Shown here piece after piece: positions 25,162 to 34,471 of a DNA stretch of 64,000 nt. Position 1 is the first letter of the stretch; each line of letters opens with the position of its first letter. Made by a program: the position numbers and the translations under genes. This stretch comes from Perkinsus chesapeaki ATCC PRA-425 (Eukaryota > Protista > Perkinsozoa), in contig JAAPAO010000096.1 in NCBI GenBank assembly GCA_013115145.1, positions 15,734 through 79,733 on the forward strand. Direction: 5' to 3'. The notes beneath the pieces were generated by a model. That model had not been told where the DNA came from. It ran no database searches and saw only the letters and a program-made list of their open reading frames with translations.

Positions 25162-26830
25162 TCACTGAGTAGACACCACAACTAGCTGAGCTGTATGATC
25201 TGCCATCAATGCAGCCACCACCATTTCTCCGCCTTTCAAGCTCGCGATTCCTGTGTACCGTTCAACCCCTTCACTGCGATCTAATTCCGTAACTCTCAGA
25301 GATCCATATTGGAGATCCCATCGATGGAGCGTGCCGTTCGATAATAGAATTGAGACGTCAGATTCTTCAGAGTGCGCAATCCCCGCTATGGGCGTATCTT
25401 TCTGGTAGTCGCCGATCTTAACTCGTTTTCTCCATTCCCCTTCACTCCCCCTTTCAAGCATATACACCCTTCCCTCGCCATTCGCCGCCACAGCTCTCGA
25501 GGCGCCCACAAATCCAATTTTCGCTATTTCCATCGGAAACGTCACCTCCGTCCCCGAGCTGCAATTCCACAGAGCCCTACCGCCAAAGGCAATAAGAATA
25601 GACCCGTCCCACCACACAACATCTGTCCCCTCTCGGCCCTCCCAGCCCACATCACACTGACCTTCCGGCCAAATACTAATGCCATCCGTTGCCACCAGCG
25701 TACCGCTCTCTCCTCCTTTCGTTGCCAGACCCACTGGAACGAAAAACGCCGCCAGCGAAGCGAAGATTTCCGCGCTGGTCTTCAGCAGGCGAGGCTGGCC
25801 AGCCCCCGTGCCTCCCGGCAGAATGAGCCCTGTCCCGGTGGGAACATTCAAGACGTCCAATAGGCCCCAGATGAGCCTGATACGAAAGAAAATGGGCAAG
25901 GGAAGATGTCGACTATACATTATTATACTACTACTATCCACTAATAAGAATACCACGCACCACATTCAAATGTATTGCAATAAAGATGCAGGAAAACAGA
26001 GAAGGAAACAGCGAGTCCCATCGACCACGACAGCTGCTCTATACGCACGCGTGGCATCTGTGGAAGATACAGTGTCCAAAATTCTGTCGCTTTATCGAGC
26101 ATGCCACTCGATTCCCCAGGTCATGGGGACTTCTAAAAAGATTTCCTTAGAGTTGCCTTACATCTGTATATTTTTTACTGGCACATGAACAGAAATGGCG
26201 AGAAAAATGTAAAACTTTATCGCATACGTGAATCGTACAACTAGCTCACACCCATCTGCAGAATCTACGGGGATTATGATACATTATACATAACCATTGA
26301 CAAACTTCCCCGCCCAAGCAGTACAGATCCCCGTAATGGACAATAAACGGCATTACTAGATTCCCATAATGCCACCATTACCAGTATAAGACTCAAAGAC
26401 CTCGAGGCATATCCATTGCTCCCAAAGGAACGCACTTGACCATTCCTCTAGCCCCAGCAGCTCTCCCAATTTCTATCACAATAGGACCGCTTTCCGATCC
26501 CCAACCAACACATTCCTATGACGCCAGATACCTCCCCGCTATATTACCCAACTGCCCATGTAAAGACTACTATACTGGACGCTTGTTTATATATTGACCA
26601 TGGCCTCGATGAATACTTAATAAACTGCTTCCTGCCTCTATCTTCACCCTTCACCTCATCTTTGCCACCGCCACCACCCTCAGACCAATCCGCGCTTGTC
26701 GAAGCGAATCTACACTTTCCGCTGGACGCCAACCACCACTCTTCCTATATTACGTGACGTTCGGCTTAACCTCTTCAATAGGCTCAAGGCCCGGAGATCT
26801 TTTAATGTCCTCAGGCAGCAAGCTTTTAGA
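25162..26830 (-). CDS. Membrane protein with a C-terminal beta-rich (propeller-like) domain; 5' end unresolved
   Basis: The spliced TM segment KYSSRPWSIYKQASSIVVFTWAVG|LIWGLLDV is followed by a ~230-aa beta-strand-rich domain (ILIAFGGRALW, RVYMLE, VSILLSNGTLHRWDL). Confidence 0.55.
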
Positions 26831-27076
26831 TATCCTATCCGAATGCCCATGCTCATACCTACAAGAATCGATGCTTGGGCTGGGTTACATAATCAATGCC
26901 ACCAAGTACAATTTCTAATATAACCCATCACTTCACTTTGGACTGCTATATCGGCATTCCCTGCTCTGCACTATACCATAGACAGATCTATATTACTAAG
27001 TAATATATAATACATCAGTAGCTGCTCACACAAGGCGGCCCCGGCACGAATAAAACGATCCCTACTCTCAGCAACC

Positions 27077-27760
27077 AAGCTGAAAACGCTCGACCGTTAC
27101 CTGCGTATAATGTCGATCTACTTTTTACGATTCAGACCTTCTCTTATTGCCGAAGTACTCTCACTACTGATTTAATATAGGATGAAAATAACAAATAAAA
27201 TATTGCCAAATTATCCGACGTAAGCCTTTCTATATGACCCACACAAATTACGCACACTGAATCCTGCAAGTAGAAATCTGCTAAATCACCAGCAGAGCCG
27301 CGACCAGCCAATTGGCGCCTTCCGACATCCCTCCATCCGTTGTATTATTACAGTTCGCTACTGTGCCGTTTTTGGCCTCCCTTCACCTCACTGGTTCCCG
27401 TGGCGTCTTGAAACTTCCTAACAGCTTCATAAAAAGCATGAAGCTCAGTGGCGATCTCTTCAGGCGTTGGCGAGGGGCTCTCTCCCAGCGAATCACTGCT
27501 TGAACCCTACCCAGCACGAAAATGGTAAACATGCATCGCTTCGCTCCGCCTACCATAGACTTTAATTCCAACAGTGGCGGTTGCCATCGAATATCTCCAG
27601 TGTCAGTATTGAGGTAATAGTTCACTGATTGGCCTGATGACGAAGCCCTTATTCTACTTCCACTGAGAAATAGGACGAAAACGAAACCAGAATGAATATG
27701 CCTTCTTGGTGGTAACAGACCATGATCAAGAAAGACAATACCTTCGGGCTTCACTCCATC
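27077..27760 (-). CDS. Small protein with a WW-like motif
   Basis: Exon GQSVNYYLNTDTGDIRWQPP matches the C-terminal half of a WW domain. Following exons read GSSSDSLGESPSPTPEEIATELHAFYEAVRKFQD and AGRGSAGDLADFYLQD. Confidence 0.45.
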
Positions 27761-28658
27761 ATGGTGATAAAAGTAATAATAAAAATTCAAGCGACTTGAA
27801 TGGTTCACACTTGTCTCTTTGAAATTGCAATGATAAGCGCATTCCTGCTAGCAACACTCCCTTTTCCTGTACGACTCCCCGGCGCTATCTTTACAGGCCA
27901 TTGTATTTCATTGTCATTATTTCACTAGTACGAAAAATACTGCGCATGCTCGTATACTACCTGAAGTATCATCGAAGTAGCTTAATTTAACCCATTTCCC
28001 TTTGGCCAACTTATTAGCTGGTATCTGACCAGCTCTACCGAGCTCGACCATTGATAAATGCAGACCATTCCTGAAAACCAGATTATCCTCATTTATGCTT
28101 CTAATTCCTATCTACTATAAATTCTTACACACAACCTATCATTAATACTTTGGGAGGATCATTCAAGAAGCTATCAGCTTGATCATCGTGATCCAATATC
28201 ACACTTGATAATGCAGTTGATGACGTATGTTGAATGATGTTAATATAACTGCCCTTATTTACTATATCACGTCCTTGAAGCAAATTCTGTACTACAGTCC
28301 TCCAAATAAACTTACAATATTTTGGAACAATACCATTACTTTACAACGGGAACGAGTTTAGGGCTCATTTTCGGATATGTTACGCATATCGCAGTTCAGA
28401 CTCACTTGTCAAAATGTTGTAACCGTTTCATGCCTAGTTACTGACATATGGGCGAGCGAAATTTTTGCGCGTGCCAGAATTGCCAAATTAACTTAAAATA
28501 ATTATTAACCATCAACGGCAACAGATGTGGGTCTGTGTGCACAAACAAGACAGAAACCTATAAGGATCAAACCAGCACACCATTGCGCTCATATAAAAAA
28601 GTAGTATCTGCTGCCATGCATGCAAGGATATGTCTATAATCACCCATAATGCTCTAGG

Positions 28659-31600
28659 TCATAGCAGGCCGCCGCCGCCGGCCTCCTCGACCATCAGCTT
28701 CCGTGCACTTATTAGTATCCCTCCATACGTCAAAAAAGGCCTGTTTGAGTTGCCTCCTTTTGAAAAGCATAGGCTCTGGTGAAGACTAGTTTTCTACTCC
28801 TATCCGACCCACGCGTCTACGCTCCAGCCCTTCATACCGTATTTTCTCGAACTCTTCTTTAAGATTAATTATCTCTCCCTGCTGCAGCCTCGACAACTGC
28901 TCTTGATTCCGCCCAAATCGTCGGAACAACTTCTGTAGTTTCCTCTGTGCCGAGGCACATTCCTTTTCCAGCTTTTTCGAGGGCGTTTCCGCGTCACTGT
29001 CGCCCCGGTCCACATCTCCCCACAGGAATTCGCTTGCATTCTTAGTCTAAAACGCGAACATCTTCAGCTGCTCCGATAGATGGTCCTCACGTCAATGCCG
29101 AGGTCGGCAAGTTCTTGCTGTATGAAATTGTGAACTTGATTCTCTCCGATTATCTCTGAAAACAATCTATCCACCACCGACTGGCCTGTGACACTTTTTC
29201 GATCAAGTCTATTTTGTAATACATATGTAGCATCCGAGACACTAGTATCGAGTGGTATATAACGTTTTAATGCATAATAGGATAGGAGGCCACGTCCCCT
29301 CCCTCTACATCCTACAGTACTGCATTTTAAATGGCAATGAAAAGTGAGGAATTGTGCGAAAATAAAAAATATCGATATAGTACATAATCTCATACAACAC
29401 TTATTATGCACTGTATTATTATTAGGTACTTATTATTAGGATGCGCTTGTTATGTACTGTATGCAAGCACCTCCGCCACTCCCCTCCTACTACTACCCGA
29501 AGATATTCCCACCGTACTGAACTTGGCCGGCAATCCTCCCTTCGACTCTATAGCTTGGACCAATACAAAACATACCCACATACCATTCAAAATGAACGAT
29601 ACCAAAGCGATAGCTTTACCTTATCACCAAAACAGGTCCAAAACCGAGGCAGACAGATTCCTACCTGGTGTCACTTCCCCAGCATAATCGAACGTCGCTG
29701 CTACACCGGCCGATAAAGGTGCGCAGTATATAAGGAATGTCATTAGAACAGCCTCACCCTTGCTTAATATTAGATTAATCTTAAAGTGTAAAAGAGCAGT
29801 TGTAGCCATTACAACCACGAATGCCCAAGCTGCCCATGGTTGTCGATCCCCTATCATAGTTGTCCTAAATAACAACAAGTCTTCGCATACTGGCACCATT
29901 CTACCTAGTAATAATAGATACGCAACTCCTGGAACACACCACGGTACTAAACCACAGTCCGATAAAATATAACCGATCGTATTTCCGCCAACTTTTCGAT
30001 GTCAATAATTAGGCATGAAACGGTTGATCGATTTACTGTCAGATTTTCGATTATCATTACGGTTCTCATGTTTACTATCTCTTGGCGTTGGGCTGTACTA
30101 ACTCATGCACATTCATATAATTTAGATCAGCCAGAGTAAGGCCAGAAGATACACGAGGCCGCTCACCGACTTTGATCATGCTTACCCCAGAGCGAAGATA
30201 GCAAGAGTCATTAATAACTGATTAGTTCCCATGGCCATACACACCCTGGCATACGCATCATAGCCCTGCCAAGATGTTTGGAGATGTTGAAATAGTTTGA
30301 AGTGGATCTGGTACCTGTGGATCTGAGATATCATTTCACAGCCGTTCTTTGGAAGGCTCAGAGTCTCAACGAAGCCGGATCTGATTACTCAAGCAGAGCC
30401 TCGAGTCAGACAGAATAAGCCTTTTTGGGTCGACTTCGTTCTACTGCGCACAAACGATGTCATTTTTTCCTGGACCAAACCAATGTCACATCGATATAGT
30501 ACGAGGCTGCTGTGACGAGCCAGGAGCTGATTTTCAAGGAGCTTATTAGCGACGCCTATTATCTTGCTTAGTCCATCCAATTTACACAGTCCAACTCGAC
30601 CTATGAAGACTCAAGCTCATCCGGCCCGAGGTCTCCAAGTACTCTTCAATAAGACGATACGGCAAATTAAACACAGCGGAGCAACCGGGCAGCTTGGACC
30701 ACTTAAAACCCGTTAATATTGAAAACGCACTCCGTATCCTAGTACACACAAAAACTAGTAAACAACAACAACGTGAATCAGCAGGAAACCTACCTCATCA
30801 GAAGACCCATAAAAGATTCCCAAAAGGTTGATAACCGGACTACTACATTCTATCGGCTTCCTTCTTCATATCATCTCTCTCCATCTTTTGCAGCTGTTCA
30901 TGCTTCCGTGCCATTGTCGCATCGACTTCCTCATTTTTAGGGGCCAAGCGATGCAGGCCGGGTATCCGCAGAATCGAACTGCCAACCCCTGATGCCTCGT
31001 AGTCCTACGAACAAGTCCACCTCATTAATTGCGATACTATGTCTACAACCGCGCACAGTGAGGGAAATGTTATATAAGACTGACCGCGCTAGTGCCACGG
31101 GGAGAGCAAACCTAACCAGGTGACCTTCCTAGGCCATGCCCACGGCCATATACGGTATCTAGGACGAAGAAGCCAGGGAACCGGCAAGATCCACCCCAAG
31201 CTTGTAAATTACTAAAAGTTATTATTGATTAACATAGTAAGAAATTCATTATATCATAGTGTGCAGATATAAGCTATTTTCCCCGTGGCTCACCTTGAGC
31301 GTCGCTGATGCAGCAGCGATCTCGTCAGTACCCGGGACAGGCAACCTGTAAAGGAAGGACTCGTCCACCGAGGCCACCGCCGCCTGCTTGTACTACCGAA
31401 GCCATTGCGTAAGGAGACGCACTACGAAGGCTTGGGCAGTTATAGAAGCATGCAGGGATAGCCAAACTGATACCAAAAGGAACATAGTGGATCCTGATAG
31501 GTTAAGGCACCTGGAAAGAACGGGACGATGAAATCTCACAGTCGAATTCACAAGGGTTTGATATGGAAATAATTCAATTACGAGTCTAACGATTGAAGTG

Positions 31601-32027
31601 ATAGATCCGGGAATTAGGAAGAGACAAGGGTTCGTTCTCCTATCAAGTGTATCGTCTTTCTTGAGGTTCTGTGTACTTACCACATCCACCAGAGCCAAGG
31701 AGGATTCTCAGGCGGCAAAACACCATCATAGAACAAGGCAATACAAAAGCCGAGCATGAGGGTGTTAACAACAAGGTAGTTATCCATCTTGGTTATAGTC
31801 AAACCGAAGAGGTCTCGCAGATCCTCCCTGTACAAACCAACCTAGAATGAATCTTGCACGGAGGTTGAGTAAAATATCTTTCCTACTTGTTGCAACCGCA
31901 TGTTTTGTATCTGATGAATTTTATTCTGCCTCAGTGTCTGGTCGAATACAAAGGCATCTTTATTATACGAGAATATCGAACCGGCGCCGCTGGCCAGCGC
32001 CGCCCCCGCAGCAGCAAGCTCTGCCAT
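28659..32027 (-). CDS. Multi-TM protein with Orai/CRAC-like TM1-TM3 pattern and a C-terminal coiled coil
   Basis: MAELAAAG...FSYNKDAFVFDQ...QQ|VGLYREDLRDLFGLTITKMDNYLVVNTLMLGFCIALFYDGVLPPENPPWLWWMW|CLNLSGSTMFLLVSVWLSLHAS...; then WQGYDAYARVCMAMGTNQLLMTLAIFALG; further TMs and a charged tail. The gene is well supported; the Orai link is inference. Confidence 0.75.
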
Positions 32028-34471
32028 TTAAACAATGTCTACGAAAGAACAACTTAGTCGCTTTAACACAATAATATAGAAGAAAAAGATATGTTATGAC
32101 GAAGGCGTTGGGAGGGTATCTTTGGTGAGACCTGTATGATAGCAATAGGCAAGTACGTAGTGTCAATAATAATAGACCTTTTGTCGTGCAAAAATCCAAG
32201 GACAAGTAGAGTTCGAGTAGAAGCCAATCAGGCAAGTGCACGAAAAATAATGACAGATCGATCGGGTTGTTGACCTAGTTTTGGTGATCTGGTTATAGAA
32301 CAGGTGTTGTCAAAGCCAATGAGCCGTATGGACATTTGAATGACAGAGTCTGGTGAGGCCATTCGTATCGCTTATTGATAACAGATACTCTATAACGTGA
32401 GTAAACAACGCTACCAATGAGAGTTAATTTAACTCTCATTTAACTCACACAAAGTATCTTAAGTTGACGAGCGCAAGATACGATTGGAGTAAAATGATAC
32501 TCAAGAGGGACAAAGAAAATGTTGACTCGAAACACAAGATGTGTACAAGAGACTCTCTTGATTCAAGAGTCTTGAAGAGAGTTGCACAGGGAGAATGATA
32601 AAGCCAAAAAACGTCCGATATTATGTTCGGGCAGTTTCTACTATTGAAGCTAGCCATAGCTCTGTCGACTTAAATCATACTGTCATAGCAGGAAACTAAT
32701 TGATTTAGCCTACCTAACACTAATGAAAGGTCACGAGTACATCAGCAATAACGTGTGAAGATGCCTTGTGTCTGCGTATAGATGTACGCATGCACAAATT
32801 CTGGGTTAAGGGCATCTTCGTCGTGGTAACCCATCTGATCCAATATGAGTACGTCCAGTGGCCAGTTGGTCGATTCTTATTTCACCCCTTATTGAATCAT
32901 CCGCTACCACTCCGTCCATCTCACTTCGGCCAGCCGAGTGCGCCCACCGCGCGCCATTATCTTTTCATCCACTGCCACTTCATCCATTCGTATTTCGTCC
33001 ACATCTCGCGTTGCTGAACTTTTTAACATGTCACCGCGAAGCCGCTTCACCATATTGGCAAAGTGGTGAATAGGAGTCGTATAATATTCTCTGGCCGGCT
33101 ATCCCACCGAATAGTACGTGGAGTCCACAATTGAGACGATAAAAGGAAACCTACTTCCAATCCCAGAATACAGTCCTCCAGAATAATCTTAGAATATTTT
33201 GAAATAACATCATTACTTCACTACTTGAGTCATACGAATCATTCTCAGAGCGGTTCCACTTCAGCTGATTCGCGAGTTCGTATTTGTATAACGTTCAGGT
33301 AATGAAGTAGATCGGAATATTCAAGTAGAATGATCCCCGACACCCTCTACTTAGTAGAGTGACTACCACTACTACTGTAGACTCGGCTCATTATGACATT
33401 AGCAGGCCTTTAAAGAGCTCAGGGTTTTATCCTCCATACTGAACGGTCGTACAATATTCTGGCCTGGTGAAACTAGCTTAACTTCGCTGAGTTAGTTTAG
33501 CTAACCGCACTAGCGAAAAACTTTTGGTTGTCCAGGTTGTCGCAAGCTCAGTATCACCGACATATCCTTCCACCGTCAAGACTCGTCGAGTGTTTCAAGA
33601 CCTGAGGAAGAAGGAACAGTTGATGACGATTAAGGCTAGTAACCTTAGATCAGTTAGACGTGATTGTTGTATCATGTATTTGCTCGTTATTAAGGACCAT
33701 TTCAATCGACATAATCCTCGAAATGAGCTCTAATATTTCCCCGTGCGCAGGGTCCTGCGCTGAAACGTGCTCCCTCAACATTTACCATGCGAAAGTCAGT
33801 GAAATGCATGAGCGTATGCCGCCTTCGGACATTATACTAGTTATTGTATGATCATCAATATCATTATTATTTCGCAGCTTCTGCGATGCCCGCGCAGGGC
33901 GGGAGGTTCACTTGTATGTCGACTCTCGATCAGTTATAGATCGCGAAGATATGAAAAGCGCGGGACATGTAAGACATCGTTAGATGTCTTGCAGAACTAC
34001 TAATAACAGTGACTGTAATAGCAAAACCTGACACGACAGTGCCGCGACGGCACTATGCAGCACAGTCTGTGCCGTCGGCACAGTCCTCGGCACCCTGCGG
34101 CCAACGGATTGGATATGCTAGCACAATAATTTCTTCCTACATCGTGATGGTATTCATTACTCTACGCGATAGCACAAGAATTCCTCCTTACCTGTCCCCA
34201 TATCGTGAGGGAACTTCGGCAGTAGGAGGACTTCGCTTCCAGTAATTAAGGAACGAAGGTAAGTTGAGTTGCTGGAATCGCGAACGGGACTGGAATCTGG
34301 AACGCAGACGGAAGTAGAATATACCGCCGCATGGCGCGACCGGGTAGATCCCATGTGCACTCCATATTGTGCAGCATGGGCACAGACAGTGGCGCAAGGC
34401 GGATGCGCGCAATAGAGCCGCTCCTCTTGAAAGAGCTTTGGTGACAAGAAGCTGGAAACAAGTTTCGAATC

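What the first reader, a model, noticed from the sequence alone, without database searches (positions are those of the whole stretch)
28659..32027. Candidate remote Orai/CRAC-type channel with Asp at the selectivity-filter position
Seen: TM1 reads NTLMLGFCIALFYDG. Established: Orai1 TM1 reads ALLSGFAMVAMVEV, with the Ca2+-selecting Glu (E106) 8 residues after the Gly of GF. Here an Asp sits at exactly that offset (codon ~31725-31727). A Pro-rich loop and a TM2 of similar length follow. Further on, YDAYARVCMAMGT matches Orai TM3 IELAWAFSTVIGT, with an acidic residue 10 positions before GT in both. A cytosolic C-terminal coiled coil also fits. Apicomplexans are generally described as lacking Orai/STIM, and E106D in Orai1 is known to relax selectivity. 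Inference: this could be an overlooked, less selective Orai-superfamily channel in alveolates. The basic residue equivalent to R91 and the E190 equivalent are not conserved, and the protein seems to have extra TMs.
Basis: partly seen in the sequence, partly recalled or inferred. Interest (0 to 1): 0.75.

Follow-up and report, generated by a model that had tools for sequence, protein, structure and literature searches.

The report
Orai-like channel candidate in Perkinsus
A 16-exon gene of the shellfish parasite Perkinsus chesapeaki encodes a large membrane protein whose core is predicted to fold like the animal calcium-entry channel Orai, so it and its relatives in perkinsids and dinoflagellates are candidate ion channels, although the sequence evidence is weak and nothing has been tested at the bench.

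Summary
The organism is Perkinsus chesapeaki, a perkinsozoan and not an apicomplexan.

The protein belongs to a family of at least 76 proteins in Perkinsus, dinoflagellates and unidentified marine eukaryotes. No member has a Pfam domain, and public records call them "pumilio domain member 4".

Support for the Orai reading:
- Language-model features put Orai-1 clusters at ranks 2-3.

Against it:
- There is no Pfam or Foldseek match.
- The basic inner-pore residues are absent.
- The membrane domain has 6+1 helices, not 4.
- The acidic site is kept in only 38 of 65 homologues.

Verdict: probably a divergent Orai-superfamily branch. Channel function is inferred only. This scan noted the same family earlier on other DNA of this genome (s1-218098).

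The parts
32039..32040 (-). Trans-splice acceptor AG; the mRNA 5' end carries a spliced-leader-like tag
   Evidence: the RNA contig of run X1 ends at 32040 with a loose end. Its reverse complement is CCCGTAGCCATTTTGGCTCA. From my own knowledge this is a dinoflagellate/perkinsid-type spliced leader.
31887..32027 (-). Exon 1 (ATG at 32027); start of a long conserved cytosolic helix
   Evidence: The 45-nt GT-AG intron 31886-31842 is confirmed by RNA contigs X1 and X2.
31681..31841 (-). Exon 2: helix extension plus TM1 (residues 69-89, 31778-31716). GF is at residues 78-79. Asp86 is at 31727-31725. TM2 starts here.
   Evidence: In the register shared by hhalign and both structure alignments, Asp86 falls on Orai E178/E106.
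31397..31510 (-). Exon 3: the rest of TM2 with the conserved His121 and the RLLTQWLR segment
   Evidence: introns of 170 nt and 51 nt confirmed by RNA; for conservation.
31294..31345 (-). Exon 4: the family-invariant LPVP motif and the start of the cytosolic loop
   Evidence: L140 and P141 are invariant.
30847..31004 (-). Exon 5: variable cytosolic loop (DYEASGVGSSILRIPG...KKEADRM)
   Evidence: tblastn with P0010 and P0002. Its donor at 30846 is confirmed by a relative's transcript (X3).
30186..30314 (-). Exon 6: HFKLF...W...YDAYARVCMAMGT motif and TM3
   Evidence: hhalign at low stringency aligns H and W here with H and W of Orai SPHE...ELAW, at the same H-x10-W spacing.
29665..29864 (-). Exon 7: end of TM3, TM4 and TM5
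29497..29619 (-). Exon 8: TM6 and the conserved E..GGLP exit
29091..29155 (-). Exon 9: cytosolic linker (IIGENQVHNFIQQELADLGID)
28838..29046 (-). Exon 10: charged helical, coiled-coil-like segment
   Evidence: weak hits to coiled-coil families. The coiled coil itself was not verified.
27961..28070 (-). Exon 11: first half of the WW-like motif (KWVKLSYFDDTSG)
   Evidence: Weak WW-domain hits with the family profile. Pfam WW was not detected.
27554..27633 (-). Exon 12: second half of the WW-like motif (NYYLNTDTGDIRWQPP)
27352..27506 (-). Exon 13: linker. The P. olseni model P0002 ends here.
26754..26858 (-). Exon 14: linker
   Evidence: Rests on the public model P0010 only; there is no RNA evidence here.
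26548..26709 (-). Exon 15: linker and the start of the seventh membrane helix
25162..25876 (-). Exon 16: end of TM7, a C-terminal domain of about 230 aa predicted to lie outside the cell or in a lumen, and the stop TGA at 25164-25162
   Evidence: The family profile gives weak WD40/LST8-like hits. The window sequence alone gives none.

Best explanation
This is one gene of Perkinsus chesapeaki: 16 exons, 892 aa, already in public records as the partly mis-spliced model 'pumilio domain member 4'. It belongs to a multigene family of perkinsids, dinoflagellates and some unidentified marine eukaryotes.

The N-terminal 350 residues form a six-helix membrane domain. Its core is most likely a very divergent relative of the Orai pore subunit. 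It has a long cytosolic helix running straight into TM1, and TM1 carries Gly78-Phe79, Leu75 and an acidic residue (Asp86 here, Glu in most relatives) at the outer end. These fall on Orai G98-F99, L95 and E106.

By inference the protein assembles into an oligomer with TM1 lining a cation-conducting pore:
- an outer acidic ring (Asp86);
- a hydrophobic Phe/Leu gate;
- an inner acidic ring (Asp67) in place of Orai's basic ring.

Two further helices, a cytosolic helical segment, a WW-like motif, a seventh helix and an outward-facing C-terminal domain would be regulatory additions. Gating would therefore depend on partners other than STIM.

Shown here: the gene structure, the family, the predicted fold similarity and the shared register. 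Inferred only: homology, oligomer, pore, ion conduction and selectivity.
For: Gene and organism:
- Exons match P0010 of P. chesapeaki at 100% in most tblastn segments.
- RNA contigs confirm four introns and a spliced-leader-like 5' end.
- All 15 introns are GT-AG.

Family:
- 76 relatives, with strongly conserved TM1, TM2 and TM3 motifs.

Fold:
- Both alignments start at the same family residue opposite chain residue 144. An ungapped M1 then puts the acidic residue on E178 and GF on G170-F171.

Sequence:
- hhalign of the family against 18 animal Orai sequences gives P 0.0071 in the same register.
- Only 1 of 100 block-shuffled and 0 of 100 fully shuffled Orai profiles reach the score.
- One member hits Pfam Orai-1 at E 0.12, TM3 on M3, colinear.

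Language-model features:
- Orai-1 clusters come at ranks 2-3 for two members (0.84-0.85; 175-181 shared features). Jiraiya scores 0.84 with 176 shared features from Drosophila Orai; PMC7016017 reports that it shares a common origin with Orai.

Pore face:
- Position 82, the Orai V102 equivalent, is small or polar in 82% of members. Position 86 is acidic in most.
Against: - No Pfam match for any member at the curated threshold. The best Orai-1 hit is 12.5 bits against a cut-off of 25.
- The family profile finds no Orai chain in the PDB sequence set at E up to 10.
- Foldseek finds no Orai for either model.
- hhalign probability is only 5.4%.
- Shape search of the ESM Atlas returns PGG-domain and fungal clusters, not Orai, so the bundle is not unique to Orai.
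- The domain has six helices, not four. Which helices stand for Orai M3 and M4 is unresolved.
- The equivalents of the basic pore residues R91/K87/R83 are Ile/Val, Asp and Ile/Val.
- The acidic residue is absent at position 86 in 27 of 65 members.
- No oligomer model and no functional data exist.
Confidence: 0.55

Rival explanations
1. The family is an unrelated, lineage-specific multi-pass membrane protein, for example a receptor, scaffold or transporter. Its helices happen to pack like many four-helix membrane bundles, and the likeness to Orai is convergent or generic.
For: - No Pfam, PDB-sequence or Foldseek match to Orai.
- hhalign probability is 5%.
- PGG-domain and fungal clusters match the shape about as well: TM 0.65 by the match, 161 residues.
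- The architecture differs: 6+1 helices, a WW-like motif and a large outer domain.
Against: Three methods of different kinds single out Orai, and Orai was named before any test:
- Rank 1 and rank 2 of 48,161 chains for two members 34% identical, covering nearly every ordered residue of the Orai membrane domain.
- Orai-1 clusters lead the named language-model hits for both members.
- hhalign's best alignment has the same register as the structure alignments, with P 0.007 and 1 of 100 block shuffles reaching it.
Confidence: 0.3
2. It descends from Orai but no longer conducts ions, as PMC7016017 suggests for Jiraiya/TMEM221, which lacks Orai's calcium-binding residues. It would act as a membrane receptor or adaptor, with the WW-like motif and the outer C-terminal domain doing the work.
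For: - The basic inner-pore residues are lost, and the filter position varies between paralogues: E, D, A, K, G, C.
- Added protein-interaction parts are present.
- Jiraiya sits at the same language-model distance from Orai as this family does.
- PMC7016017 reports that Jiraiya lacks the calcium-binding residues.
Against: - TM1 is the best-conserved helix of the family, with Phe79, Leu75, Asp67, Asn73 and Thr74 kept.
- Most members, including all but one of the dinoflagellate-type members, keep Glu at the filter position.
- The predicted pore face carries small or polar residues rather than lipid-facing ones.
Confidence: 0.15

Closest known systems
Orai / CRAC channel pore subunit (Pfam PF07856; Drosophila Orai structure 4hkr)
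   Same: - The predicted fold superposes on nearly all ordered residues of the Orai membrane domain: rmsd 2.7-2.8 Å over 141-143 residues.
- A long cytosolic helix is continuous with TM1.
- GF, Leu and an acidic residue in TM1 lie in the register of G98-F99, L95 and E106.
- A Pro-x-Trp-Leu motif opens TM2.
- H-x10-W precedes TM3.
- A helical segment follows the last helix of the domain.
   Different: - No significant sequence match.
- Six helices in the domain plus a seventh downstream, against four.
- 892 aa, against roughly 200-350 aa in the animal Orai sequences fetched here.
- R91/K87/R83 are replaced by Ile/Val, Asp and Ile/Val.
- The E190 equivalent is not kept.
- The filter residue varies between paralogues.
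- It adds a WW-like motif and an outer C-terminal domain.
- STIM arose around the origin of animals (PMC7016017), so no STIM partner is expected.
Jiraiya / TMEM221 (Pfam PF15038)
   Same: It is a divergent branch sharing a common origin with Orai that lacks the calcium-binding residues (PMC7016017). It lies at the same language-model distance from Orai as this family (0.84, 176 shared features).
   Different: It is restricted to animals and has four helices.
PGG domain of plant ankyrin-repeat membrane proteins (Pfam PF13962), and a fungal (Basidiomycota) cluster with no common Pfam family that may be DUF6535 (PF20153)
   Same: They match in shape among predicted structures: TM 0.58-0.65 by the match, 161-163 residues, rmsd 3.2-3.5 Å. 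DUF6535 also appears among the weaker language-model hits of this family and of Orai.
   Different: No sequence signal: neither family appears among the Pfam hits of 57 members. TM-score normalised by the query is only 0.42. Domain architecture and taxa differ.

Membership tests
Orai / CRAC channel (PF07856) | Sequence match to the Pfam Orai-1 model at its curated threshold | tested here: not met
   No hit for the window's exons or for the close relatives. Of 57 members, one hits at E 0.12, 12.5 bits against a cut-off of 25.
Orai / CRAC channel (PF07856) | Profile-profile similarity to an Orai alignment | tested here: inconclusive
   hhalign P 0.0071, probability 5.4%, 49 columns, in the expected register; 1 of 100 block-shuffled and 0 of 100 fully shuffled controls reach it. 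The Orai profile held animal sequences only.
Orai / CRAC channel (PF07856) | Fold of the solved Orai subunit | tested here: met
Orai / CRAC channel (PF07856) | Four membrane helices with both ends in the cytosol | tested here: not met
   six helices in the domain and a seventh downstream. The first six leave both ends on one side, presumed cytosolic. The membrane side was not computed.
Orai / CRAC channel (PF07856) | Glutamate selectivity ring at the outer end of M1 (E106 human, E178 fly) | tested here: inconclusive
   The window protein has Asp86. In the family the position reads E30, D8, A8, K7, G5, C3 of 65. All but one of the dinoflagellate-type members have Glu; that one (P0076) has Asp.
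Orai / CRAC channel (PF07856) | Hydrophobic gate and hinge in M1 (V102, F99, G98, L95) | tested here: met
   in register, Phe79 (45 of 56), Gly78 (34 Gly, 14 Ala) and Leu75 (47 of 56). The V102 position is small or polar instead of Val.
Orai / CRAC channel (PF07856) | Basic inner-pore residues (R91, K87, R83) | tested here: not met
   the equivalents are Ile/Val71, Asp67 (46 of 56) and Ile/Val63.
Orai / CRAC channel (PF07856) | Hexamer with M1 lining a central pore | not testable with these tools
Orai / CRAC channel (PF07856) | Calcium-selective current gated by store depletion through STIM | not testable with these tools
   This is a bench experiment. STIM arose near the base of animals according to PMC7016017.

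The most novel reading that the evidence does not exclude
Perkinsids and dinoflagellates carry their own expanded branch of the Orai superfamily. In it, the pore domain is fused to two extra helices, a WW-like motif, a seventh helix and an outward-facing domain. These proteins would be the calcium or cation entry channels of these organisms, gated without STIM by cytosolic partners or outside ligands, with selectivity tuned between paralogues by the residue at the filter position (Glu, Asp, Lys, Ala).
Probability: 0.25. Interest if true: 0.8.

Novelty: new variant of a known kind. Interest (0 to 1): 0.6.

Why it matters
- Orai channels are thought to date back to the last common ancestor of eukaryotes (PMC7935092, PMC7016017). 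BLAST searches nevertheless found none in apicomplexans or Paramecium, and the channels behind calcium entry there remain unidentified (PMC3194816).
- Full-text searches of the held library for Orai with Perkinsus, dinoflagellate or Symbiodinium found no paper on Orai in these organisms.
- A divergent Orai-like family with several paralogues per Perkinsus species, also present in reef-symbiont and polar dinoflagellates, would give concrete candidate genes for calcium entry in a shellfish parasite and in ecologically important algae.
- It would also show how far the Orai pore can be rebuilt: extra helices, an acidic instead of a basic inner ring, and fused interaction domains.
- It corrects a misleading public name, 'pumilio domain member 4', and a mis-spliced public gene model.

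Tried and rejected
- My first reading was that the Orai likeness was a chance motif. I dropped that.
- I guessed an exon 'IRSAFSILTGF...' in 30770-30590. It is intronic: a relative's transcript joins 30847 to 30314.
It is coding sequence of exon 5. ARAGORN and Rfam find nothing.
- Pfam scans of exon pieces, full-length relatives and C-terminal parts found nothing, not even WW.
- PDB sequence searches with family profiles gave no Orai.
- Foldseek against the PDB gave nothing for either model.
- pdb_via was of no use, because Orai was not among Foldseek's top 753 chains.
- The contig of MMETSP fragment P0001 is not on record.
- The big protein search with a TM4-6 profile found only 9 representatives. 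The word search with the full-length relative found the family.
- The word search with the Orai alignment listed only animal Orai, so no plant, algal or oomycete Orai could be added to the profile.
- The reciprocal language-model search from fly Orai did not list the Perkinsus cluster among the rows shown. This is indeterminate.
- At low stringency hhalign also pairs His121 with the M2 His and LPVP with Orai's LP. These pairings need 9- and 8-residue insertions in TM2, so I do not rely on them.
- Locus L025 from the metagenome scan looks like a mammalian Orai1 contig. After seeing its excerpt I left it out of every alignment and search.
Full report
**What is in the sequence.**
The finding lies in a multi-exon gene on the minus strand. 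Contigs from two public RNA runs are identical to the window. They join 31839|31885, 31508|31679 and 31343|31395, each skipped stretch having GT..AG ends. They carry an unmatched 5' tag at 32040 whose reverse complement is CCCGTAGCCATTTTGGCTCA. From my own knowledge this is a dinoflagellate/perkinsid-type spliced leader. ATG 32027 is therefore the first ATG of the mRNA. A relative's transcript, about 87% identical with differences at third codon positions, joins 30847|30314. The spliced protein reads ...KMDNYLVVNTLMLGFCIALFYDGVLPPENPPW..., with Asp86 at 31727-31725, and YDAYARVCMAMGT at 30262-30224.

**The whole gene and its owner.**
- A word search with one exon found an MMETSP fragment.
- A profile of TM4-6 run against 1.84 billion representatives found nine proteins, among them the 573-aa P0002.
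- A word search with P0002 then found 76 relatives. These come from Perkinsus olseni, P. chesapeaki and P. marinus (several paralogues each, named 'pumilio domain member 4' or 'WW domain-containing protein'), from the dinoflagellates Polarella glacialis and Durusdinium trenchii, from MMETSP transcripts, and from many unnamed environmental proteins.
- tblastn shows the window's exons match P0010 of P. chesapeaki at 100% in most segments, so the organism is a perkinsozoan, not an apicomplexan.
- The public model retains intron 3 and skips 23 codons of exon 6. RNA contradicts both.
- The corrected model has 16 exons, all 15 introns GT-AG, and 892 aa, with the stop at 25164-25162.
- The order of parts is: a long conserved N-terminal helix; TM1; TM2; a cytosolic loop of about 90 aa; TM3 to TM6; a charged helical segment; a WW-like motif; a linker; a seventh helix; and a C-terminal domain of about 230 aa.
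- Exons 14-16 rest on the public model and on paralogues with the same layout. No RNA evidence covers them here.

**Sequence tests for Orai.**
- Pfam finds nothing for exon pieces or full-length relatives. Of 57 members scanned singly, one hits Orai-1 at E 0.12, with TM3 on M3.
- Family profiles find no Orai chain among PDB sequences at E up to 10.
I used a degenerate DNA pattern for the animal TM1 motif against metagenome contigs and obtained 34 loci. One mammal-like contig, L025, was left out.
- I aligned 18 invertebrate open reading frames.
- hhalign of the family against this profile gives one alignment: P 0.0071, probability 5.4%, 49 columns.
- At lower stringency the alignment runs on colinearly to TM3. 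It pairs the family's invariant His and Trp with H and W of Orai's SPHE...ELAW at the same H-x10-W spacing, and then Gly with Gly after a 7-residue insert.
- Shuffling Orai columns within 10-column blocks gives a mean score of 16.9 (sd 2.8), and 1 of 100 shuffles reaches the observed 26.1. Full shuffling gives 0 of 100. The reversed profile scores 20.3.
- The signal is real but modest.

**Structure and language-model tests.**
- AlphaFold2 on the family alignment gives confident models for P0002:1-350 (pLDDT 81.5) and for the Durusdinium member P0075:44-375, which is 34% identical (pLDDT 82.2).
- Both alignments begin at the same family residue, the Arg of LYRED, opposite chain residue 144. An ungapped M1 then puts the acidic residue on E178, which is the selectivity Glu according to PMC11085791, and GF on G170-F171.
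- This is the hhalign register, reached independently.
- Language-model features of both members put Pfam Orai-1 clusters at ranks 2-3 of named clusters (0.84-0.85; 175-181 shared features).
- From fly Orai, Jiraiya scores 0.84 with 176 shared features. PMC7016017 reports that Jiraiya and Orai share a common origin.

**What speaks against it.**
- Foldseek finds no Orai for either model.
- A shape search of the ESM Atlas returns PGG-domain and fungal clusters rather than Orai, so the bundle is not unique to Orai.
- The domain has six helices. I could not see residue-level alignments, so I cannot say whether Orai M3 and M4 correspond to TM3 and TM6 or to another pair.
- In register, Orai's basic pore residues R91, K87 and R83 are Ile/Val71, Asp67 and Ile/Val63.
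- Position 86 reads E30, D8, A8, K7, G5, C3 of 65. One clade has the acid two residues later, and another has Lys86 with Glu82.
- Asp is therefore the minority state, and the claim of lower selectivity is untested.

**Reading.**
None would stand alone. I put the Orai-derived core at about 0.55-0.7 and an actual ion channel at roughly 0.4.

Several features fit a water-facing TM1:
- TM1 is highly conserved.
- Position 82 is small or polar.
- An acid sits at position 86 in most members.
- Asp67 is conserved.

Oligomer, pore and conductance are inferences. The WW-like motif has only weak support: E 0.5-2 with the family profile and nothing in Pfam. It and the outer C-terminal domain suggest regulation by partners other than STIM.

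**Known or new.**
Orai outside animals is well documented: in plants, green and brown algae, diatoms, oomycetes, haptophytes and kinetoplastids (PMC7016017, PMC11085791). BLAST found none in apicomplexans or Paramecium (PMC3194816). Full-text searches for Orai with Perkinsus, dinoflagellate or Symbiodinium found nothing relevant. The same scan had already noted a tandem pair of Orai-like genes elsewhere in this genome, and its follow-up reached a similar view (s1-218098). That note is not independent support. I class the finding as a new variant of a known kind.

Noticed in passing
window 31346-31396 and 30245-30314: The public P. chesapeaki gene model (P0010, 872 aa) reads through the 51-nt intron 3, dropping VVRLLTQWLR. 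It also skips the first 23 codons of exon 6 (YQIHFKLFQHLQTSWQGYDAYAR). RNA contigs support the corrected splicing.
   Followed up: yes
window 32040: The mRNA 5' end carries a spliced-leader-like tag 13 bases upstream of the ATG (an 11-nt leader after the acceptor AG). The RNA library was made by RT-PCR, so the tag may come from a leader-specific primer.
   Followed up: partly
family-wide (P0002, P0010, P0012 and others): Public records name these proteins 'pumilio domain member 4'. No Pumilio repeat or any other Pfam domain is detectable in them, so the name looks like a propagated error.
   Followed up: partly
L035:3001-5148 (contig of 227 kb) and L036, L037: A clade of the family (about 700 aa, Ala/Gly at position 86 and Asp/Glu at 88) sits as single uninterrupted genes on gene-dense eukaryotic metagenome contigs. 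Its neighbours are mitochondrial carrier, SURF1 and ribosomal L11 genes. The organism was not identified.
   Followed up: no
window 25165-25875 (-): The C-terminal domain after the seventh helix has no Pfam or PDB sequence match on its own. The family profile gives weak WD40/LST8-like hits (E 0.0016). Its fold was not modelled.
   Followed up: partly
L025: One contig from the metagenome scan encodes a mammal-like Orai1, probably host DNA in a gut sample. It was left out of all alignments and searches after its excerpt was seen.
   Followed up: no
ESM Atlas clusters: An oomycete cluster of 359-aa hypothetical proteins is the nearest named cluster to this family by language-model features (0.86). 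The fungal DUF6535 appears in the weaker hits both of this family and of fly Orai. These may be further unrecognised relatives of Orai.
   Followed up: no
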